DNA from: Trichosphaerium sp. ATCC 40318
Taxonomy: Eukaryota; Protista; Tubulinea
Reading direction: 5' to 3'
NCBI GenBank assembly: GCA_038496445.1
Contig: JALMLS010000538.1
Span: forward strand, 124,001 to 188,000
DNA: 64,000 nt
Each line of letters begins with the position of its first letter. Position 1 is the first letter of the stretch. The notes beneath the pieces were generated by a model, which worked only from the letters and a program-made list of their open reading frames with translations, was not told the origin of the DNA and did no database searches. The translations under genes were made by a program, and so were the position numbers. Shown one piece after another: positions 11,017-55,721 of this stretch.

Positions 11017-13274
11017 ATGAGCGTGGAACGCCCAAAGAAAAAAAGACGTTTGGTGGAAAGAAAACGAGGTAGACTTTCTTGTATTGCTTGTCGTAACGCG
11101 CATTCAAAATGCGATGAAGGAAAGCCTTGTGGACGCTGTACTAAAAAGAATATTGAATGCGTTTACACCAAACCAGCTAGAAGAGGACCCGTTTCAAGTA
11201 CGCGCTAAAAATAAGACTGTTTCTTACATCCCTAATAATCTTTGCTTACAGATAAGATACAAAATGCGAAGTTAAAAGATCTTCAAGCACAACTCGCTTT
11301 ACAATCACGTGAGCTTGAACATTGGAAAAAGCAGTACTCCAAGCTTACAACAAACCAGGTATTGTGTTTCTTTTTGTTTGAGAAAAACCGGACCGTTTTG
11401 TTTTGTGGTTCACATTTGTTGTAAGGCCTGCATCGAGCGTTAAGCTATTTGTGCTGCTGCTATTTAACACCATTCTAATAATTGTACAGAGTGCTCTATG
11501 GAATCTGTGTTTGGACTTGAACATCTCATCGTGTGTTACAACATGGATAATGACTTACAAGAAATTATACCAACCAAAGTTTGTATGACCAAACGTCGTT
11601 GTATTGAAAGTTCTAAGTTATTGTCAAGGGCGTACCACTGCGTCACTGGAACTCAACGAACATCATATCCACTATACAAAACTGTCAAAGTAACAAAAAC
11701 TGTTCTTTGTTCACGTGCCATGTATATCAGGTTTAATGTTCTTTTTGTAGCTTGGTCTGCTGATCCAAATATATTTGAAGTCGTTTGTATCATTGCCACA
11801 GGAGCACGTCATGTTTTCCCAAGAGCATCTGACAAACTATTCGAAATATGTGAGCAAATTTATTTAAACCTTGATGATATGATTCACCCTTGTATAGCCA
11901 GTATGTCGTATGATACTCCTTGTAAATAACTTACATACGTATAGCTGGTTTAGTTCTTCTTGGGAAAGATACTGGATTTTTTTCAGGAAAGCCAGAAGTA
12001 TCTGAATACACAATAAAAGGCCAAAGTACGTTTCGTCAGTTTTCTCGATAGCAGACTTCTCGCTTATTGTTTTTTAGCTATGCTCTCTACACTTGTCAAA
12101 GATCCCTTATTTTCGTCAATGGAACATCTTCAAGTAGTAGAACGAGGATGTAAGTTATTTTCTCATCACGTGTTTACCGACAGGTACGCTTTAAGAATAA
12201 CAATTATCTTGTTTATAATTTTACTTTGTAGGGCAAATGCGCTTCAACGTATGAAACCAATAAGCGACGAACTTCGTAGACTTATATCACAGCCTACTAA
12301 ACCAAGTTTGGCGCTTGCAACCCAAGTAGTTTGGTGTTCTCTAGGAAAGGTACATATTTTTTTTCTTAACAACTTTCTTTGCTTAAGTTGTGTTCAAGAT
12401 GTGGCTTACCATTTCAAAACAAATATCATCAAAAGGAATAGAATTCCAGCTAACTAGTATAGTACGCATCAGCTCAACCTTTAGTTGGTTTTCACCAGTC
12501 TTACTAACGATACCTTGAACTAACTTCGATTAAGTCTGAAGACCAGTTTGCAGCTTTTGTACATGAACACTCTATAATAAACAAGGTTGGGCTCGAAGTG
12601 ATAGATAAACAAGAGAACGAGGAATTGTATGTGAGATTCCAAGTATTATGCGCTGGTGTTTCTGCGTTTATTTACTTTGCTGGAGGTCACACTGTTGAGG
12701 TACTTAAGGTAGGTATAGTATTGCTTAAGAAAAATAGCTAACAGACTTTACCAAGAGGAGTAAAGCCTTGTTTTATCAGCCACATCATAACTACCCTGAT
12801 TCATGCCCTCACTACAAGCACATACTACACGACTTTGGAGTCATTTCAATTCATAATCGGGACGTACCGTTCCTGAAAGAGGTAAGGACAATAGTAAACA
12901 CTTTTGTTTTTGAAGTTTACAACATGGTTAGATTATGGTTTTATTACATAGTGGATTTGACGAGTGTAAGCATTTGATAACGTACGATTAAATCTATGAC
13001 TTATTTACTAAATTACGTATTTAGATCTTTGTTTGTAATGGCAGATGACCACGGATTAGATTATGACAAAAAAAGCCTTATGAAAATATTTGGTATGGAT
13101 CAAGTGACGACAGACATTGATTGTTCTTTGGATATTAACTTTGAGAAAATACTTGATACATTGCCGCCATCAGAGAACCTTAATGAATTCCCAGAATTAG
13201 ACTTGTTTCCCAATGAGGACGAGCTAGAATTGGAGTTTTTAGATTTTCCGTTTGATGATAATTACAACATGTGA
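11017..13274 (+). CDS. Zn(II)2Cys6 (GAL4-type) binuclear-cluster transcription factor (spliced)
   Basis: CIACRNAHSKCDEGKPCGRCTKKNIECVY = C-x2-C-x6-C-x5-C-x2-C-x6-C, preceded by NLS-like RPKKKRR, followed by a coiled coil, and ending in an acidic tail (activation-domain-like). Confidence 0.88.
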
Positions 13275-13453: not shown

Positions 13454-14061
13454 TCATAAACATCTAAATTGCAACACAAGGTGAATGGTAGAATTATTTC
13501 TTATTTTGTATGATGCAAGTGTTCTATCATCTTCAAGTGCTCGACCTCCAAATATGAGACGCTGCTCATTCGGAGGTATACCTTCCATGTCAAATATACG
13601 TTCTTTCAAGTCTAACACTTTTAAAGTCGGCTCAATAGTTACATATAAAGTGCACCCAGTAAGTGTTTGTATTTTCACTCGTGTACCTAACATATCGTGT
13701 TAGTTGGTGAAACGGTAAATTGGCAGTACCATAGGTGGAGAGATTGCTATACTTTTGCCACCTGTTGGTTTTTAGACTAGTTGCAGTAAATAAAAGAAAA
13801 AACAACCGATTTAGTACCTTGGAGTAACAGGTGCATCACGTGACTTCTGAGTACTCATATTCCCTACCAACCATCTCATGGATATCTTTCGTGTGTTTCT
13901 AGCATTCTTTAGTGTATTTGAGGAAGATTATAGTACGTACTGTAAACGCATTGTTGGTACTATTGTAAACAACCCTAAAACATATTCTGCAAGGGAACCT
14001 TTAAAACAAAGTGTCATTGGTTTCACGCACCTGAACTTAATTTGGTTTTATCACTTTGCAT
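13454..14061 (-). CDS. Ubiquitin-like domain protein (Ub/NEDD8 fold at C-terminus, no di-glycine; 5' exons uncertain)
   Basis: [74 protein letters not shown]. Upstream exons inferred from splice signals only. Confidence 0.75.
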
Positions 14062-15275
14062 TGTAACTCGTTAAGGACCTCAAGAAGTTTGGTTTGAGGT
14101 GATGTCGCGTTCACTATAACCGTATCGGAAAACTCAAAATTTTCGACCTTGGTTTTTTTCTGGAGGGTTGTTGGAGCCTATTTTTACCACCTTTTTTGGC
14201 CATTAGGAACGCGGACGAATATTCAATGATTGTGAAAAAGCGTTTAGTTTATTTCAGTGACTTTGCAAAGTATTTCAATTCACTGCAGTTTTTCTGTTTT
14301 GACGAAATTTTTGCGGTTCTGTACACCACCTTAAGAACTTTCTTGGTTTTTATTTTAAAGACATTTATTTTGAAAATACAGTTTGTACATAATGGCTAGC
14401 TATATGATTAAATCGGAGCTACGTTAACCTGAAGGTGTTTCGCTTCAAGGAAAAATCACGTGGTAGCCCAAACCATATACGCCTTTGATTTATTGATTAA
14501 ATCAGTTCTGGACATGGCTGGGTAACGGATTGTCGCGATATTATTTGTGTTCCACGATTAAAAAATGGACAAATATCTAAATAGTTTAACAGCCGAGATA
14601 GTCTTGTCAAAGCAGGTTAATACGTTCCAAACAGCTCTAGGTCATACAGTTTTGTACATTATACAATCACAACTACGAGGAAGAATCTTGGGTGAGGTCC
14701 AAAGTAGGTTTTGATATGAGTAATATTCAAGGTATACTGCACTCCTTTTCTTTTAAAATGAAACGAATACTGCATTCCAGTGAACGACTTGTCGCCGTTT
14801 GTGCAGAGTCTTTAAATTTAAAGTACTGGCACCAATACAATGAACGGCATAATGAATAGGTCGAAGGTCATTTAGCGAATTGCCAGCAACAACGAAGATT
14901 ACTCCCCTTTTTTTTGAATAGGGTACATGTATCTCTCTGGAGCAAATATTACCTCGTAGAATCTTTCTGGTAATTCTGAGTACATTATGGGCGTTACCTA
15001 TGTTCACGTCGTATACCAAAATAATCACAGTTATGTATTGTTCTAAGAACGGCGTTTATGAAGCAAGGAAGGCCTAGTCTACTTTCAAAAGCGATATGAT
15101 TATTATTATCTTATTTTAGATACTTATTAAGGTACAAATTTGACGCTACTGATACTGCTAAAGTATCTAAGGTAAGGCTCCTTGCTGACAAATTATGAGA
15201 ACGATGAAATTCACGGCAAGGTTGTCAGTATTTCAAACAAAAGTGCAATAATCTGTCTGAGGTAACCAGTTTTAT

Positions 15276-18200
15276 TCAATATTTCCATGCTCTTATTGTT
15301 TCTTCAATATCATCCATTTGTTTCTTTAATCCAACCTCCCATCTTCCTGCGCTTGCTTGTAATGCTTCTGATATTGCTTGGAAAGCTGCCATTATGCTAG
15401 CTTCTGAATCAATATCTTTCATGAATGAGTCACTAATCGATTGCCAAATTTGTGGCTTGATTCTTAACCCATGCTTGGATGCCACTGTCAACACTGGTAA
15501 AAGAAATTCTGCCAGCTGTTTATCTCGTGTTCTATCGTACGCCTAAAGGCAATAGAAAAGTCAGAGTTTGCGCTTACCAGCAAAAGAGAAAGACACAAAA
15601 CGTACATTAGCTAGATTTGTGAGGCAGTGTTTCAGTTGACCAAGTTCACGTGATATGCTGTCATTAGGTAATAGCTCAATGCTATGGAACGGTCAGGACT
15701 TCATATACAAGTTATAGAGTTATATCTTACTTATCGTTTGATAGCCATGCGCCTTGAGGTTTGTAGCAACTTGTTTGAAGCATTTGAAGGAATGTGTAAA
15801 GATTCAAAGACTTTTCCATTGTTGTTGATCCACTCAATGGAAGCAATCTTAATCCTCTTGATTCCCACGCTTTCGCTTCTTCTTCTGTTACAGAATCTGA
15901 GTCCCAAATAACAGCATAAGCAGGTCTTCTAGCACTCTACATACTCTCGATTAATTCAAATCAAAAAAACACAAAAAACCTGATGTTTACCTCTAACAAG
16001 GAAGATACTTCGTCCATTATCACCTGAAAATTTTTGTCTCGCAATGAATACCCAATGAATAAAAATGTTCTATTTAGCAAAAGACCTTTCAACAGGGCTG
16101 AAATTGCTGGTCTCTTTGCGAAGTAATCTTCGTAGTCCTGAGCACCTCTTAGAAATGTACTCTTCAAAAAAAAATCCAATACCTTAGCTCCGAAAACTGA
16201 TGTTTCTGGCGCATGCACGTGTCCATGTATCTTCAAAATGTTAGTCTGTGTTCCAACAGGCATTCTTGCGACATCTAAGCGAAAGAAAGATAAGTAAAAC
16301 TGTATGTGAAGCAACTTATTAATACCTTCTGCTGAATTTATAGAAAATACTACACGCTTTATGCCTCTGTGAGCGCGCTCCAACAGGTCATCGTAGTTTG
16401 TAGTCACAATAGCTCTTAAAGGTAGTGTTGCTATAAGATAGTGCACAAGCGATGGAAGAGGCGCAGAATCCTCAGAATACCTAAGAATGGGCTAAGTTAA
16501 AACCAACGCAACATTTTATCATCTCAAAGTACCCAAGTGCATTCTGGAGTTCAGCACCGAACTTATCACCAAGCTCATTTCGTAGCGCATCAGCATACTG
16601 CAGCATACCTTAACAGAGATTTAATTTATAAACGTGTTTGTTCACATGTTGTACCATCGACATTGTCGGCAAAGCTTTCTCTCATGATGTAAGAGTTCTT
16701 TCCCATCGTTTCAAGCAACTGAGTCCAGTTCGGAAGCCCTTTGAAGCTGTTAGTACAAGCAGTTTTTAAAGATAATTAGTACCTGAAGAAGTGCTTATTC
16801 CTGCTCCAGCAAAGAGTACAAGTCTCTCAGAACTCAAATCTTGCATTAAAGTATGAATATGTCCAAGTGCTTTGTTGTTACTAAACACTCTGAAAGATCC
16901 ACTCTTAAACTGCGGTGACACATGACCTAGAGAAGCAACGCTCAATCTATGGATTACACCAGAGTATGACGTCAACACAGGAAGGATATGAGGATATAAT
17001 CTAGCTCCTAGGAAGGTAACATTAAATCAAAAAAGGAGCAAAGATTCTTAAATACCTTGTATCATTTCTTGTATTTGTGTTCGAATAATATCCTGTCTAC
17101 TATGAGTCGTGCCTCTACCTATACCAAAGAATGGAAATACAACAGTATTCACCTTGTCAGTTGGTACTTAAAAAAAGAGAAAAAAGTCAGTAATACATCA
17201 CAAAAGTAACATTCGTACAGTTTGCTCTGAGCTCTCTGTAAACATTTTTTAGCAGCTCCAAAACTGTTTGCGCTGTCACATGCCCAGACCATTCTCCTTT
17301 AAAACTGTAAACAACTTAAGAAATACCAAGATTCTTACCTCCTGGTATACATAGAACAACATCTGGTACACTTTCTGGACTATCAGGGCAGTTTTTACGA
17401 ATTTCTTCTTTAGAAATAAACTTTGCTAAAAAAACGTCAATGTCAAATTGTTTTATTTCTTAAACATCACAGAAAATACTTACCAAAACCTTGAGGAAGT
17501 CCTCCACTTTTCACAATGTCATACGCTATTTCTCAGTGTTACTTAAAAGATCAAACGAAAAAAACTACGCACACTCTCCACATCGGCCAGCTCGTCCACC
17601 GCGACCACCACGACCACCTCGTCCACCGCGGCCAACACGACCACCGCGGCCAACACGACCTCCGCGACCTCTTGTACCACGAACAGGCCTTCCACCACGT
17701 CCACTATAGTTTCTTCCTGGTCTTGAAACATTGAACTTTGTACGTAGGTAGCTAGCCATAAAAAAGTTAGAAAGAGCAAGGAGAAAGCATTGAGAATATC
17801 TACATACTGTCGGAAATCTGTTCCAAGGACACCTTCCAAGCTATCAGCTAGAAATCCTGATCCTAAGAAGCAACCACACGAGTATAATAGTACATCTGTC
17901 TTAATACAAGCCATATTTGCTCGTAAAGCAATTGGCATTTGAGATGTTAAGTGCGATGGTATTTTTTCGTTAAGAGATGAATCACTTGGCATAACTGACG
18001 TTTTAGTACGTTCGTATGATAGCTGATTACTCTCTACGCTTTGTTGAGGTGCGAAGGATGATGATCTAGCGAGAGGTAAATCGTTTGAAAAGACTGTCTT
18101 CTGTGTACCCATAACTAGTGGTTATTCTTGTTCGCTTGCGTTGTGGAGGGGATTCTCGGATATTGTAGGATGGTTCTGAGCTCTTGGATACATTACCGCC

Positions 18201-18596
18201 ATTTGCTTGTTTTATAGCAGCTCTAGCGCGTCGTAACTTAGCTCTGCGTCTATTACGCTTTTGTCCTTTGGTCAATGTTTTCGCTTGTGCCTTTACATAA
18301 CGTCAAAACGTGCTACTTAGTCTATTCTCCACATACGTCAAGTGGTACAGTCTCAATACGTATTTTCATGTCGTTCTGCGCGAGAAATGTATCTTCAATA
18401 CGCACATCATTGTGATACGCTCTGATAGCCTTATATACGTTATTATATGCGTTTACATAACCTGGGTTTGTACTTTCTCACGTAAAACGTCTTGCGCACG
18501 CGTTAACAAGTGCTGTACGTGTACGTCACTGTATTTAAACCCTAAAGCGTGCCAATTATTTGTAGATGGGTTACTACTAACATAAACCGTTGCCAT
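15276..18596 (-). CDS. Macro-like domain (with inserted RGG box) + SIR2_2-type NADase domain protein (multi-exon)
   Basis: SIR2: LVLFAGAGISTSSGLPNWTQLL, IVTTNYDDLLERA, ILKIHGH, DYEDY, RTFLFIGYSLRDKNF. Macro-like: IALRANMACIKTDVLLYSC...GSGFLADSLEGVLG, DVVLCIPG, TVVFPFFGIGRG. Exons join in frame through GT..AG introns; 5'-most exons less certain. Confidence 0.85.
17580..17705 (-). repeat. GC-rich low-complexity tract encoding an RGG/RG box
   Basis: Minus-strand frame SGRGGRPVRGTRGRGGRVGRGGRVGRGGRGGRGGRGGRAGR; CCACCGCGGCCAACACGA occurs twice in tandem. Confidence 0.85.
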
Positions 18597-19366
18597 TTTG
18601 CTTTATTGGTTAATGGCTCACGCCTGATATAAAGTGGTTGGTGTGGTGAATAGTGATTCAGAAAAAATTAGACATAACGGAAAACTCTTCGAGAATTTAG
18701 TGACGTACAAACATGTCAAAGGCCATTTGGGGTAATCTAAACGAGTTGTTTTCCGCTTGACTACCTCAGCACTAGTTAATAGAGCATTGGGCATCTAGTG
18801 AAGGACACAAGTCTGAAGACGAATTTTCTTTGTTTCGTCAAAAAAAAGTCAGATGGTTAATAGAACACGTGGTCGACCTGCTCATCATAAACTTAAATTT
18901 CGGTTGTATTTTAATAGTGTCCGCCGTGTATATGGTACTTCTACACACGCAGAACAGTGCTGTGTACTTTTTAAGTTGCAAAAGTATCCGAAAGCATTAT
19001 AATTTTGTCGGCAATTCGGACACTATAAAGTGATAACGAACATGTACACGATGTCAAAAAGGTAAGAAGAGTGCCTTTTCACATAGGACTAGAACTCAGT
19101 TATCTTCTCTCTTGCTGGGACTTATTGCATAGTTAACTTATTGGCGTTCTGTTCGTAGTAGTTGCAAAAGCTGCTAAGTAAGAAACCAGGCTCACTTTTG
19201 CCATTTCTAAAAATATGTTGTCCTTGTTAATTGTTGAAAGACTACAACCACTTGATAATCCAATAATACGTAAATCGTTCAGAGAATTACAAAATAACAT
19301 AAAATGACTAACGGTTTTTGAGGTTAAAGTAGTTTAATTTTTATAGTTAGTACAAGTGTAACACAA

Positions 19367-36028: not shown

Positions 36029-36763
36029 TTATTCCAACTGTACTTTCTTGCCATCAACATAATAACACTCCTCCTTTAACCCGCCTAGGTAGTGCCAACT
36101 CTTGTATTCTGCATGATATTGACCATCAATATAACTACATTGCTCTTTTAAACTACCGTCTTGACGCCACTGCTTGTACTCTCCATGATAGCGACCATTT
36201 ACATAGCTACATTCTATATGTAATAACCCATTATTATGCCAACGCATACAACTGCCGTGACATTTGCCTGAAACGTAATTACACTGCATGGACAATTGAC
36301 CATTGAAATACCACTCCTTATGCTCTCCAATACGCTTACCCATGATATAATTACATTGTTGTTTTAACTGGCCGTTGACATGCCACGTTTTGTATTCACC
36401 TTCATACTTGCCTTTGATAAAATTACATAACTTTACCAGGTGGTTGCACTCCCATTCTTTGTACTCTCCTTCAAGTACACTATTTGCATAATTGCACTCT
36501 CTCCACAATTTACCTTTATACCAACGCTTCCGTACTCCATGTTTCCTACCATGTTTCCAGTACTGTTGAAGAGTTAAGCTTCCATCTTTCCTAGTTTGCC
36601 ATTTCCCGTGTTTTTTAAGCTCACCATCATACCTTGTTATCATTGCAGCATATCTTGATAGAAGGGGCCATTGTACATACGCTTTAATGTCTAAATCTAT
36701 TATATCTAGCTGAATCTCTACAGGAAGGCTTAATAGATAACATTGCTCCGATTGTGAGGTCAT
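36029..36763 (-). CDS. F-box-like N-terminus + MORN-variant (YwqK-type) repeat protein, intronless
   Basis: LLSLPVEIQLDII...WPLLSR, then ~8 repeats of GEYKxWxxNGQLxxQCNYxxG. Confidence 0.85.
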   Translation of the reverse strand: MTSQSEQCYLLSLPVEIQLDIIDLDIKAYVQWPLLSRYAAMITRYDGELKKHGKWQTRKDGSLTLQQYWKHGRKHGVRKRWYKGKLWRECNYANSVLEGEYKEWECNHLVKLCNFIKGKYEGEYKTWHVNGQLKQQCNYIMGKRIGEHKEWYFNGQLSMQCNYVSGKCHGSCMRWHNNGLLHIECSYVNGRYHGEYKQWRQDGSLKEQCSYIDGQYHAEYKSWHYLGGLKEECYYVDGKKVQLE

Positions 36764-37110
36764 TGTAGGGATACTGTTTTTCACGTAAGCTTTCTACTAA
36801 AATTCCATAAAAAAACCACTGAAATCGGGTTGCGTTTGTGTTACTTAAGTGACTACAAAGATTCGTAACGAAACAGTTAATCAGGTACAGTCTCTACGGC
36901 CACCTCTAGCAGAAGGTGTTTGTAGTCAAACCATTTTCTTTACCAGAATTAGCTCATTTTGGAATTCATTTTTGTTGATTTTGTGAACAAACGCTCTTTA
37001 TTTTAACATTGGGGATATATTTAAAGATTTAATTGTAATGACTAACTTGGTAATAAAAACATAGAAAAATACAAGAAAGAGAAAAGGGTACAAATACCGA
37101 AAAGCTGCAG

Positions 37111-53456: not shown

Positions 53457-54200
53457 ATGTCCAGTGGTCTGGTTAAGCTTAATATAGGCGGTAAGAAGTT
53501 TGTTACAACAGAAAAGACAATAGCTTCGCGAGGAGACAATATTTTAACAAACCTTTTGAAAAAAAAGAAGGAGGACTTGACGTTAGACGAAGAAGGCTCT
53601 ATATTTATAGACAGATCTCCGGAAGATTTTGCAGTCATACTAAGATATTTAAGAACCGGTGTAGTCCATGTACCTCCTAATCTATCTAAACCTGCTCTCC
53701 GAGACGAATTTAAGTTCTTTCAAATCAAAACCGACTACTTCTTTCTTGGAGAACTCAGCGACGCGCTATGGGAGTGTACGACGTACCAGATGGCTAAAAA
53801 ATGGCTTGATCAGGACGTATGGCCTGTTATGCTTAAAACAGCAACGAATCACGTGAACAGTAAGACGATAACACGTGCCGTACAAAGCCCTTACGCCTTT
53901 ACTAAACCGAGTGTTGTTACTGGAAATTTCAGTCTCGACAAATGCCATGCTATGGCTCTTCCTTCACGTGATCAATTACCAAGCATACTCGCTGCAATGA
54001 AGCAATGGTTATACAGGACGCGTGGGATGGACTGTACTTTCGTATACGATCAAAAATACAGCCCTGGACGCTTCACCTTTATGTTCGATATTAGTCAGTT
54101 CTACATGAAACAAGACCCTCTATCGCTCGTTCATGATCAATCTTCACAAGCATTAAGAGTAAAGCAAACGCCTTACATCAAAGACAGAAAGGAGATCTAA
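53457..54200 (+). CDS. BTB/POZ (KCTD/T1-type) domain protein, intronless
   Basis: LVKLNIGGKKFVTTEKTI...DEEGSIFIDRSPEDFAVILRYLRTG...LRDEFKFFQI. Confidence 0.9.
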   Translation: MSSGLVKLNIGGKKFVTTEKTIASRGDNILTNLLKKKKEDLTLDEEGSIFIDRSPEDFAVILRYLRTGVVHVPPNLSKPALRDEFKFFQIKTDYFFLGELSDALWECTTYQMAKKWLDQDVWPVMLKTATNHVNSKTITRAVQSPYAFTKPSVVTGNFSLDKCHAMALPSRDQLPSILAAMKQWLYRTRGMDCTFVYDQKYSPGRFTFMFDISQFYMKQDPLSLVHDQSSQALRVKQTPYIKDRKEI

Positions 54201-54512
54201 ATAAAGAACCACGACAAGAGCATCAGGCACCAAAGCGTTGTATAATAATAAAAAAACTCTATTCTAATATGAAAACTACACTTTGATTAAGCTCACGTGC
54301 CAGGAAACGGTTTTTTTGTCAAACAAAATTGAATTCTTGTCAACAACAAGCTGCGAAATACTAAGATAAAAAGTACAAAAACAACAGCGCGAGCAATCCA
54401 ACCTAAGGTTTTTTTTGGAACAATTGCGAATGACTTGATTTGATGTCGCTGTCTTTTATTTTGGTCAAGCTTCGTTCTCAATAGAGAAGCAGCTGGTTAT
54501 CCTTTAAACAAA

Positions 54513-55721
54513 ATGAGCCTAAAGCTTCCAAGTCCTAACAACCCAAACGACAAGACTTGTGGTTTTTGGAGCCTTCCCAACGAAACATGTATAGAAATAC
54601 TCTCCAACGTTTCTCACAAAGATATTTTGGCGTTAGCAACAACTTGCGGCAGTATGAACGCTATTTGTAACTCAAACTTTATTTGGAGCAAGATGTACTC
54701 CAAAACGTTTCCATTATCCTTCTGGTTCCATAAAAATCAGAAAACCAAAGTGACAGAGCCAGAATCATGGAAGGAAGCAACTAAAGAGGGTTTTAAAATG
54801 AGAAAAAAGTTTTTCGTTGAACACAGAACAACGACTTTCAAAACAGAGCCTATAGCCTTTCCAGGTGTAGGCGGCTGGGTCAATGACTTAAGAATAGATC
54901 CATACAACAAGAGCAGGGTTTTGCTTTGTGGTGGACTTACAGCAACACAAAACAAAAAAGGCTTTTTGATGTTCCAAGAAAATTCCTCAGCAACTTACTT
55001 TACACATCCAAACTTCTGCTTGGGTAGATCATGTGCTGTTGGAAAGGATATAGTAGTAGCTGGTATAACAGAGGGAATCATTATTTGGAATAAAGACGGA
55101 AAAGTATCCTCATTTACTGAGCTTGGTAAAAAACAGCATCCGAGAGGAATATGCTTTGTTGATGATAAATCTCTTGCCTATGGAATTTCAGACAGTGTTG
55201 GTACAATGCATACATATAACCTTGACAATGTAAAGATATTTGATATACCTACATTACGTGTAAGAACTGAATTCGAGGGGCATAAATCAGGTATATATTC
55301 AGTACGAACATCAGTAAGTGGAAGCCTTATTGTATCATCAAACTCAAAAACAACAAAAGTTTGGGATGAAAGGTCAGGACCAAAGGCAGTGTTAACACTC
55401 AAAGATTTATCAAATGTAAGCTCACTTATAGATAATATAGTAGGCGGGGCGGGTGTTTTTCATGTAAGCATAGTAGACATTAGAATGCCTGACAAGCCTT
55501 TTTTCAGAAGAAAAACTGAACGAAATTACTATTCAAAGTCAGTTCAAATCGATGCTATGAAGCTTGTTTATGGTAGTGGTCCAAATGGTGTAAGTATTTT
55601 TGACTTAGCAGATCCTTGGCATAATCGCGGTTTTATTAAAGGAAATTGTTATAAGCTGGATACAACACTTGAAAAGATTGTTACACTTCATGAAAAGAAG
55701 CTGGGTTTTGTTGAAATATAA
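54513..55721 (+). CDS. F-box + WD40-repeat protein, intronless
   Basis: SLPNETCIEILSNVSHKDILALATTCGSMNAICNSNFIWSKMY (F-box); FEGHKSGIYSV...TKVWD, VKIFD, SIFD (WD40). Confidence 0.88.
   Translation: MSLKLPSPNNPNDKTCGFWSLPNETCIEILSNVSHKDILALATTCGSMNAICNSNFIWSKMYSKTFPLSFWFHKNQKTKVTEPESWKEATKEGFKMRKKFFVEHRTTTFKTEPIAFPGVGGWVNDLRIDPYNKSRVLLCGGLTATQNKKGFLMFQENSSATYFTHPNFCLGRSCAVGKDIVVAGITEGIIIWNKDGKVSSFTELGKKQHPRGICFVDDKSLAYGISDSVGTMHTYNLDNVKIFDIPTLRVRTEFEGHKSGIYSVRTSVSGSLIVSSNSKTTKVWDERSGPKAVLTLKDLSNVSSLIDNIVGGAGVFHVSIVDIRMPDKPFFRRKTERNYYSKSVQIDAMKLVYGSGPNGVSIFDLADPWHNRGFIKGNCYKLDTTLEKIVTLHEKKLGFVEI

What the first reader, a model, noticed from the sequence alone, without database searches (positions are those of the whole stretch)
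15276..18596. Eukaryotic Macro-SIR2 protein with an intact antiphage-type NADase: candidate innate-immunity sensor-effector
Seen: joining the exons gives a basic disordered N-terminus, a Macro-like domain (ANMACIKTDVLLYSC, VVLCIPG, VVFPFFGIGRG), a SIR2 domain with GAGIS-GLPNW, TTNYD, KIHG and FIGYSLRD, and a helical tail. It lacks the Cys4 zinc ribbon and the TQNID motif of deacetylase sirtuins. Known: TTNYD/KxHG/GYS marks the SIR2_2 clade of NAD+-depleting effectors in bacterial defence (ThsA, DSR, SIR2-HerA, SIR2-pAgo) and animal FAM118 proteins; Macro domains bind ADP-ribose derivatives and serve as the signal sensor in type II Thoeris. This is distinct from the SirTM class of macro-linked sirtuins. 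Inference: a fully intronised, single-chain ADPR-signal- or RNA-gated NADase that could trigger NAD+ collapse during viral or bacterial infection of a protist.
Basis: partly seen in the sequence, partly recalled or inferred. Interest (0 to 1): 0.9.

Follow-up and report, generated by a model that had tools for sequence, protein, structure and literature searches.

The report
Amoeba Macro-SIR2 NADase-type gene
An amoeba-like protist carries a real, spliced and transcribed gene that fuses an ADP-ribose-binding Macro domain to a bacterial-defence-type SIR2 NAD-cleaving domain; such fusions have already been reported in eukaryotes, so this is a well-documented new member and not a new kind of system.

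Summary
The gene is real. It has 15 exons on the minus strand, and all 14 introns are GT..AG and 42-63 nt long. Spliced RNA contigs confirm ten of the introns. The product is 709 aa: an S/T-rich leader, a divergent Macro domain with an RGG box in a surface loop, a SIR2_2 domain, and a helical C-terminal domain.

- **SIR2_2:** Pfam E 8.8e-21, with ThsA as the best PADLOC match. All family-invariant residues are present, including N424 and H464. There is no zinc ribbon.
- **Macro:** Pfam does not detect it. The protein aligns end to end (E 1e-149) with 619-aa Asgard-archaeal proteins. The N-domain profile of that family hits YmdB and macroH2A macro domains (E 7e-13), and the AF2 model matches macro folds.
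- **Fusion:** Exon 7 alone encodes both the end of the Macro domain and the SIR2 GAGIS motif, so the fusion is not an artefact of joining two genes.
- **Correction:** The start is most likely ATG 18112.
- **Prior art:** Bonhomme et al. (bioRxiv 2024) already describe a eukaryotic ThsA-like SIRim clade fused to Macro in 83 species.

NADase activity, ligand gating and an immune role remain inferred. No TIR partner was found next to any of nine prokaryotic homologues. The scan also noted a second Macro-SIR2 gene elsewhere in this genome (s1-404357).

The parts
17808..18112 (-). Exon 1. ATG at 18112. aa 1-58 form an S/T/Q-rich leader. aa 59-101 are the first Macro strands and helix (ANMACIKTDVLLYSCGCFLGSGF).
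   Evidence: Gene model. RNA contigs cover 17856-18006 and 17808-17866. Homology to the Asgard protein begins at aa 59.
17573..17751 (-). Exon 2: the RGG/RG box (aa 102-161), inserted in a basic surface loop of the Macro domain.
   Evidence: The exon 1-2 junction (intron 17752-17807) is in RNA contig X4 record 8. The insertion is absent from all relatives. The 3' junction (intron 17526-17572) is inferred only from reading frame and homology.
17484..17525 (-). Exon 3: Macro domain (YDIVKSGGLPQGF).
   Evidence: Aligns with the Asgard sequence GGGLYQGF. The exon 3-4 junction is shown by the loose end of X2 record 6.
17339..17425 (-). Exon 4: Macro domain (…VVLCIPGG).
   Evidence: Intron 17297-17338 is confirmed by an RNA joint.
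17219..17296 (-). Exon 5: Macro helix (EWSGHVTAQTVLELLKNVYRELRAN).
   Evidence: RNA contig covers 17250-17295. The following intron, 17167-17218, is inferred.
17056..17166 (-). Exon 6: Macro strand plus Gly loop (VVFPFFGIGRG) and the following helix.
   Evidence: RNA contig X1 record 2 joins it to exon 7. Family-invariant Pro and Gly residues are kept.
16783..17007 (-). Exon 7: the last Macro strand and helix, the linker, and the start of SIR2 (GAGIS). The domain fusion lies within this one exon.
   Evidence: Gene model. RNA contigs X1 record 2 and X2 record 5. Alignment to relatives.
16655..16738 (-). Exon 8: SIR2_2 (GLPNW…).
   Evidence: Intron 16739-16782 is confirmed by an RNA joint. Intron 16609-16654 is confirmed by a loose end.
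16533..16608 (-). Exon 9: SIR2_2 small-subdomain helix.
   Evidence: Frame and homology only.
16326..16480 (-). Exon 10: SIR2_2 with TTNYD (N424, D426).
   Evidence: Pfam SIR2_2. Invariant columns are kept. ThsA alignment.
16183..16274 (-). Exon 11: SIR2_2 with KIHGH (H464).
   Evidence: RNA contig covers 16182-16239. Invariant K, H and G are kept.
15991..16137 (-). Exon 12: SIR2_2 with FIGYSLRD.
   Evidence: Introns 16138-16182 and 15937-15990 are confirmed by RNA joints.
15731..15936 (-). Exon 13: end of SIR2_2 and start of the helical C-terminal domain.
   Evidence: RNA contig X1 record 1.
15606..15681 (-). Exon 14: helical C-terminal domain.
   Evidence: RNA joints on both sides.
15276..15542 (-). 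Exon 15: helical C-terminal domain and the TGA stop (15276-15278).
   Evidence: The RNA contig reaches 15269. Aligns to the end of the Asgard protein.
18066..18596 (-). Upstream 3-exon ORF, out of frame with the gene. It is probably a separate small gene or an upstream ORF, not part of the Macro-SIR2 protein.
   Evidence: Frames and the intron-c test. RNA contig 18094-18293 is unspliced. No Pfam hit.

Best explanation
This is a transcribed, 15-exon gene of an amoeba-like protist. It encodes a three-domain protein: a divergent Macro domain, a ThsA/DSR-type SIR2_2 domain, and a helical C-terminal domain.

Proposed mechanism:
1. The Macro domain lacks the MacroD catalytic Asn and Asp, so it probably binds a ligand and does not hydrolyse it. 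I propose it senses an ADP-ribose-containing ligand.
2. Ligand binding would switch on the SIR2 domain, probably through oligomerisation, as happens in ThsA, DSR2 and FAM118B.
3. The active SIR2 domain would cleave NAD+ to ADPR and nicotinamide, depleting NAD+ during infection or stress.
4. The lineage-specific RGG box in a Macro surface loop may add RNA or condensate binding, or control by arginine methylation.

Shown here: gene structure, transcription and splicing, domain identities, and intact catalytic-site residues.
Inferred: NADase activity, the identity of the ligand, the activation step, and the immune role.
For: - SIR2_2 Pfam hit at E 8.8e-21.
- ThsA is the best PADLOC match.
- The fold of the orthologue's SIR2 domain matches the DSR2, ThsA and KomC NADases, with TM 0.8 and rmsd 2.5-3 Å over about 275 residues.
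- Every invariant column of a 46-member family alignment is kept in the window protein, including the N and D of TTNYD, the H of KIHG, and GY…D.
- The protein aligns end to end with 619-aa Asgard proteins, E 1e-146 to 1e-149.
- The N-domain profile hits macro domains in the PDB, E 7e-13 for YmdB.
- The AF2 model (pLDDT 89.7) matches macro folds with Foldseek probability 1.0.
- In the YmdB alignment the catalytic 'NAAN' and 'GGGVD' positions are S/T and non-Asp in this family.
- Full-length AF2 gives pTM 0.91, a compact three-domain unit.
- Spliced RNA contigs, plus the single exon 7 that spans the domain boundary, put both domains on one mRNA.
- Eukaryotic SIRim-Macro fusions have been interpreted as immune in the literature.
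Against: - No biochemical data exist for any member of this family.
- None of nine prokaryotic neighbourhoods holds a TIR or other signal-generating partner. Only one looks like a defence island. The source of any ligand is therefore unknown, and the immune context is weak.
- The near-invariant adenine-contact Asp of the Macro domain (97% in the family) is Asn66 here. This could weaken or alter ligand binding.
- The Macro domain falls below Pfam thresholds and has no match to PADLOC defence Macro models.
- I have no expression data under infection.
Confidence: 0.5

Rival explanations
1. The SIR2 domain is a protein or nucleic-acid ADP-ribosyltransferase, and the fused Macro domain reads or limits its own product. 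This is writer-reader logic like the SirTM-macrodomain pairs, not bulk NAD+ depletion.
For: Macro domains are classical readers and erasers of ADP-ribosylation. The best sequence hits of the N-domain profile are O-acetyl-ADPR deacetylase YmdB, macroH2A1.1 and the PARP14 macros. Some sirtuins work as ADP-ribosyltransferases (PMC12700824). The prokaryotic genes stand alone in non-defence neighbourhoods.
Against: The SIR2 domain belongs to the SIR2_2/ThsA-DSR clade, whose characterised members are NADases, not to SirTM. The Macro domain lacks the MacroD hydrolase residues.
Confidence: 0.15
2. It is a housekeeping or stress regulator of NAD+/ADPR metabolism, for example product-inhibited or product-activated NAD+ turnover with ADPR feeding back through the Macro domain. 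It would have no dedicated immune role.
For: Eight of nine prokaryotic contexts are ordinary metabolic or transport neighbourhoods, with no mobile-element or defence genes. The gene is expressed in ordinary RNA data sets.
Against: All characterised relatives of this SIR2 clade act in defence or immunity (ThsA, DSR1/2, KomC, FAM118B). One homologue lies beside an integrase and a SLFN-AAA-TPR gene. A constitutively active NADase would be toxic.
Confidence: 0.2
3. The protein is catalytically or functionally decayed. It would be a scaffold or a gene drifting after horizontal transfer, with a Macro domain no longer able to bind ligand (Asp to Asn, plus the RGG expansion).
For: Asn66 replaces the 97%-conserved Asp. 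R206 of the family is Leu, and the conserved D488 is Gln. The terminal branch is long, 1.19.
Against: The 709-codon ORF is intact across 15 exons with all splice sites canonical. It is transcribed and correctly spliced. All 14 invariant family columns are kept.
Confidence: 0.07

Closest known systems
Eukaryotic SIRim 'clade C' (SIRim + Macro fusions), Bonhomme et al., bioRxiv 10.1101/2024.09.18.613514
   Same: A eukaryotic protein with a SIR2_2/SIRim domain of ThsA-like affinity fused to a Macro domain. That paper proposes an immune role on the basis of architecture alone.
   Different: I could not place this gene on their tree. This protein has an RGG box inside the Macro domain, a conserved helical C-terminal domain, and its nearest relatives are in Asgard MAGs and Uabimicrobium. 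I did not find these details in the parts of that paper I read.
ThsA, type I Thoeris effector (SIR2-SLOG), e.g. PDB 6LHX, 7UXT, 8WC0, 8BTO
   Same: The SIR2 domain is the best PADLOC match: E 3e-18 on the window piece and 1e-44 to 1e-50 on relatives. TTNYD, KxHG and GYS are shared, and there is no zinc ribbon.
   Different: There is no SLOG/STALD sensor domain. Instead there is an N-terminal Macro domain and a C-terminal helical domain. No ThsB/TIR gene lies next to any of nine prokaryotic homologues. In the window I saw none in ORF listings read by eye for 9-27 kb.
DSR2 (defence-associated sirtuin 2), e.g. PDB 8WYB, 8K9A
   Same: It is the best structural match for the SIR2 domain of the orthologue (TM 0.81-0.84, rmsd 2.5-2.9 Å). 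It is an NADase.
   Different: DSR2 is about 1000 aa, with a large HEAT-like sensor that binds phage tail tube protein. It has no Macro domain.
Type II Thoeris effector (TM-Macro ThsA)
   Same: It uses a Macro domain as the sensor for an ADPR-derived signal (His-ADPR).
   Different: That effector has transmembrane helices and no SIR2 domain. The N-domain here shows no detectable similarity to any PADLOC Macro model.
FAM118A/B (SIRanc/SIRal), vertebrate SIR2_2 proteins
   Same: They are eukaryotic SIR2_2 sirtuins related to antiphage sirtuins, with NAD processing dependent on oligomerisation (PMC12700824).
   Different: FAM118 proteins have no Macro domain and belong to a different eukaryotic clade (clade A in Bonhomme et al.). 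Placement relative to them was not tested here.
SirTM (macrodomain-linked sirtuins of fungi and bacteria)
   Same: A sirtuin is functionally linked with a macrodomain.
   Different: SirTM is a separate sirtuin subfamily that ADP-ribosylates proteins (PMC12700824). The window protein hits PF13289 SIR2_2 and ThsA/DSR models instead.

Membership tests
SIR2_2 (PF13289) / SIRim | Pfam PF13289 hit above the gathering score | tested here: met
   74.9 bits against a cutoff of 24.5, E 8.8e-21, on window:15964-16491:-.
SIR2_2 (PF13289) / SIRim | Catalytic Asn (TTNYD) and His (KxHG) present | tested here: met
   N424, D426 and H464 are kept. All 14 invariant columns of the 46-member family alignment are identical in the window protein. 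The ThsA alignment agrees.
SIR2_2 (PF13289) / SIRim | Absence of the Cys4 zinc module of canonical sirtuins | tested here: met
   No Cys between aa 202 and 583 and no CxxC anywhere. No PF02146 hit.
Macro domain (PF01661 / MacroD-like fold) | Pfam Macro hit above threshold | tested here: not met
   No hit on the window exons. Only 3 of 40 family N-domains reach even E 0.01.
Macro domain (PF01661 / MacroD-like fold) | Profile-level sequence homology to solved macro domains across the whole domain | tested here: met
   The family profile A1 hits YmdB at E 7.3e-13 (profile positions 1-176 of 187), and also macroH2A1.1, PARP14, Af1521 and MacroD2. The window protein aligns to this family throughout.
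Macro domain (PF01661 / MacroD-like fold) | Macro fold | tested here: met
   The AF2 model of the orthologue P0152:1-215 has pLDDT 89.7. Its top Foldseek hits are all macro domains, with probability 1.0 and target-normalised TM 0.68-0.77. This was tested on the 37%-identical orthologue, not on the window protein itself.
Macro domain (PF01661 / MacroD-like fold) | ADP-ribose-contacting residues: the adenine-binding Asp and the Gly-rich loops | tested here: inconclusive
   The Gly loops and the invariant Pro are kept (G86, P242, G247). The 97%-conserved Asp is Asn66. Binding cannot be tested with these tools.
ThsA (type I Thoeris effector) | SLOG/STALD cADPR-sensing domain C-terminal to SIR2 | tested here: not met
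   PADLOC ThsA hits on relatives cover only profile positions 4-235 of 478. There is no STALD Pfam hit. The C-terminal domain is all-helical.
ThsA (type I Thoeris effector) | Adjacent ThsB/TIR gene | tested here: not met
   No TIR family appears in nine prokaryotic neighbourhoods. No TIR-like ORF was seen in the ORF listings for window 9-27 kb. The window check was by eye, not by a systematic Pfam scan.
Type II Thoeris effector (TM-Macro) | Transmembrane helices plus a Thoeris-type Macro domain | tested here: not met
   No PADLOC Macro or ThsA2 hit for 40 N-domains even at E 1. The orthologue's AF2 secondary structure shows a compact soluble fold. I ran no transmembrane predictor.
Eukaryotic SIRim clade C (Bonhomme et al.) | A eukaryotic SIRim of ThsA-like affinity fused to Macro | tested here: met
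   Introns and spliced RNA show it is eukaryotic. ThsA is the best match. The Macro domain is shown.
Eukaryotic SIRim clade C (Bonhomme et al.) | Placement inside their clade C on their SIRim tree | not testable with these tools
SirTM | Membership of the SirTM sirtuin subfamily | not tested
   The only evidence is indirect: Pfam and PADLOC assign the domain to SIR2_2/ThsA-DSR. No SirTM sequences were compared.

The most novel reading that the evidence does not exclude
The RGG box, inserted precisely in a surface loop of the sensor Macro domain, could make this a nucleic-acid- or condensate-coupled NADase. RNA binding or arginine methylation at the RGG loop would then gate ligand sensing and NAD+ collapse. 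No such mode of control has been described for any SIR2_2 effector. A second possibility is that the tight 100/100 subfamily shared only by amoebae, Asgard archaea and the phagocytic planctomycete Uabimicrobium reflects either an Asgard-derived immune gene kept in Amoebozoa or gene exchange among phagocytic lineages.
Probability: 0.12. Interest if true: 0.7.

Novelty: new member of a known kind. Interest (0 to 1): 0.42.

Why it matters
Eukaryotic relatives of bacterial NAD-depleting defence enzymes are an active topic (FAM118B/SIRanc, SARM1-type logic). The Macro-fused clade has only been catalogued and never tested. This locus offers a clean, RNA-supported gene model from an amoeba that may be culturable. 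It has intact catalytic residues, prokaryotic orthologues that model with high AF2 confidence, and a natural variant (the RGG insertion and the Asp-to-Asn change in the Macro pocket). Together these could be used to ask what ligand such sensors read when no TIR partner is present. The finding does not establish a new kind of system.

Tried and rejected
- **Pfam on individual Macro exons and on the upstream ORF exons:** no hits. Exon pieces are too short and the domain too divergent.
- **Reaching the window's own annotated protein:** The search for homologous proteins with the orthologues P0152 and P0168 returned no window-encoded protein. The spliced protein could not be passed to the structure or library tools. 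Fold and profile tests were therefore done on the 35-37%-identical Asgard orthologue and the family alignment, and transferred to the window protein by alignment.
- **The protein-atlas search on the SIR2 piece:** it only repeated the SIR2_2 assignment.
- **Thoeris-like TIR partner:** none in nine prokaryotic contexts. I dropped the idea of a conserved two-gene system.
it can be built as a self-consistent ORF. It was disfavoured because of the atypical 82-nt, 45%-GC intron, which is retained in RNA.
- **Fungal origin:** I briefly considered this because of a Zn2Cys6-like ORF at 11017-11208. I dropped it because the eukaryotic homologues are amoebozoan and other agents' notes call the genome amoeba-like (not checked by me).
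- **Direction of transfer between Asgard, Uabimicrobium and amoebae:** the subfamily backbone is a polytomy. Eukaryote monophyly is neither supported nor rejected, p-AU 0.52.
- **Literature search for 'Macro-SIR2' phrases:** nothing beyond Bonhomme et al..
Full report
**Gene structure**

The region holds a minus-strand, intron-rich gene. I built a model by hand and checked it by script. It has 15 exons running from ATG 18112 to the TGA at 15276-15278, and it encodes 709 codons. All 14 introns are GT..AG and 42-63 nt long. Intron GC is 24-40% and exon GC is 36-59%.

**RNA evidence**

Three of the four public runs laid on 15100-18800 gave contigs that match at 99% or more. Those contigs lack exactly the predicted introns, so they derive from spliced RNA.

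- Eight joints are listed with CT..AC ends on the + strand. The skipped stretches are 15542-15604, 15682-15730, 15937-15990, 16137-16181, 16738-16781, 17007-17054, 17296-17337 and 17752-17807. Several are marked 'cut +1', which puts them on the GT..AG boundaries of my model.
- Two loose ends match the sequence expected across introns 16609-16654 and 17426-17483.
- Four introns rest on reading frame and homology only: 17526-17572, 17167-17218, 16481-16532 and 16275-16325.

**One transcript, one fusion**

X1 record 2 joins exon 6, which carries the Macro strand VVFPFFGIGRG, to exon 7. X2 record 5 joins exon 7 to exon 8.

Exon 7 (16783-17007) itself encodes the last Macro strand and helix (aa 268-296), the linker, and the SIR2 Rossmann motif GAGIS (aa 335-339).

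**N-terminus**

That upstream ORF has 3 exons. Read unspliced, it stops at 18066-18068, and it is in another frame from the Macro-SIR2 ORF.

The two can be joined in frame only by removing an 82-nt segment, 18115-18196. That segment is longer and more GC-rich (45%) than any of the 14 other introns. The only RNA contig covering the place (X2 record 7, 18094-18293) reads straight through it.

Homology to every relative starts at aa 59 of the ATG-18112 ORF, which corresponds to residue 4 of the Asgard proteins. I therefore take ATG 18112 as the start. The extended form is not strictly excluded. The upstream ORF has no Pfam hit, and how it relates to this mRNA is unexplained.

**SIR2 domain**

- A 176-aa stop-free piece gives Pfam SIR2_2 at E 8.8e-21.
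- Its best PADLOC match is ThsA.
- Its PDB sequence hits are ThsA, DSR2 and KomC.
- I aligned 46 relatives (A2) and added the window protein. It keeps all 14 invariant columns: T422, T423, N424, D426, L428, E430, K462, H464, G465, F505, G507, Y508, D512 and G646. It also keeps nearly all columns conserved at 90% or more.
- There is no Cys in the SIR2 region.
- The AF2 model of the orthologue (pLDDT 88.4, pTM 0.91) superposes on the DSR2 SIR2 domain at TM 0.81-0.84 and rmsd 2.5-2.9 Å. It also matches ThsA and KomC.

**Macro domain**

Pfam finds nothing on the window exons, and almost nothing on 40 family N-domains. This explains why the relatives are annotated only as 'SIR2 family protein'. The evidence comes from less direct tests.

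- An exhaustive search with the SIR2 piece found 1635 relatives. Many are about 570-630 aa long with the SIR2 domain starting near residue 300.
- The spliced window protein aligns over aa 59-704 with the 619-aa proteins P0001, P0151 and P0152 from Hermodarchaeota and Promethearchaeota MAGs. E values are 1e-146 to 1e-149 and identity is 35-37%. It also aligns over nearly its whole length with a protein close to that of Uabimicrobium (P0003) and with a Flabellula baltica transcript. The Candidatus Uabimicrobium amorphum protein itself (P0169) joins the same subfamily.
- A profile of 40 N-domains (A1) hits E. coli YmdB at E 7.3e-13 across the whole domain, followed by macroH2A1.1, PARP14, Af1521 and MacroD2.
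- AF2 of P0152:1-215 has pLDDT 89.7. Foldseek returns only macro domains at the top, with probability 1.0.

The second refutation criterion, an N-terminal region with no Macro fold, fails for the family. By alignment it also fails for this protein. I could not fold the window protein itself.

In the YmdB alignment the MacroD 'NAAN' Asn and the 'GGGVD' Asp are replaced in this family. That suggests a binding domain and not a hydrolase; this is inference. The window protein differs from the family at the 97%-conserved first Asp, which is Asn66. All close relatives keep Asp.

**RGG box**

Exon 2 encodes about 50 residues that are 42% Gly and 31% Arg. Its junction with exon 1 is seen in RNA.

In relatives the same position is a short basic loop. 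It falls in the lower-confidence stretch of the orthologue model (residues 61-70, mean pLDDT 75-81). The insertion is unique to this gene among the sequences I compared.

**Relatives and context**

- Nine prokaryotic neighbourhoods show a stand-alone gene with no TIR neighbour. The surroundings vary. Only one lies beside an integrase and a SLFN-AAA-TPR gene.
- A careful tree gives a 100/100 subfamily. It holds the window protein, amoebozoan transcripts (Flabellula, Difflugia and one unnamed EukProt entry), Asgard MAG proteins, Uabimicrobium proteins and a few metagenomic fragments.
- The backbone of that subfamily is unresolved. Eukaryote monophyly is not rejected, p-AU 0.52. I cannot name a donor.
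- Other agents' notes call this genome amoeba-like. That agrees with where the eukaryotic homologues come from, but I did not verify it independently.

**Prior knowledge**

Bonhomme et al. (bioRxiv 10.1101/2024.09.18.613514) report five eukaryotic SIRim clades. Clade C covers 83 species and branches with ThsA-like bacterial proteins. [quoted passage not shown]

The FAM118 paper (PMC12700824) sets out the SIR2_2 subfamily and separates it from SirTM.

The architecture is therefore known in eukaryotes. I found no functional test of the Macro-fused clade in the papers I read.

**Verdict**

The Thoeris analogy is weakened by the lack of any TIR partner and by the divergent Macro pocket.

This is a new member of a known kind, with one lineage-specific twist, the RGG box. 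Interest is moderate.

Noticed in passing
window 18066-18596 (-): A three-exon ORF of about 146 aa with a strongly basic C-terminal third lies immediately upstream. It begins MATVYVSS… and then continues KGQKRNRRRAKLRRARAA…. It overlaps the ATG of the Macro-SIR2 ORF by 47 nt in another frame. It has no Pfam hit. It could be a separate small gene, a long upstream ORF, or an alternative 5' exon set.
   Followed up: partly
window 17580-17703: Run X2 gives a depth spike (28.6) over the RGG-coding repeat, with loose ends at 17636 and 17671 that run into unrelated sequence. Transcripts of other RGG-box genes evidently cross-map here.
   Followed up: no
window 11017-11208 (+): An ORF with a Zn2Cys6-type (GAL4-like) cysteine pattern, CIACRNAHSKCDEGKPCGRCTKKNIEC. 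This is an unusual transcription-factor class outside fungi. I identified it by eye only.
   Followed up: no
window 53457-55721 (+): A BTB_2 domain ORF (53457-54200) and an F-box + WD40 ORF (54513-55721) sit side by side (Pfam). A MORN-repeat ORF is at 36029-36784.
   Followed up: partly
window 13454-13693 (-): A ubiquitin-like ORF (…[39 protein letters not shown]). I identified it by eye only.
   Followed up: no
L001 8001-9860; L003 8001-9794: The closest full-length relatives of this amoeba gene are intron-less genes on ordinary prokaryotic contigs. The contigs come from Asgard (Promethearchaeota/Hermodarchaeota) MAGs and from the phagocytosis-like planctomycete Candidatus Uabimicrobium. This is an unusual three-way distribution, and its history is unresolved.
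   Followed up: partly
L006 2315-4569; L007 2-2256: In one bacterial lineage the Macro-SIR2 gene overlaps by 4 nt a 125-aa gene with a weak DUF7669 hit. It lies next to a phage-type integrase and a SLFN_AlbA_2-AAA-TPR gene. This is the only defence-island-like context among the nine I examined.
   Followed up: no
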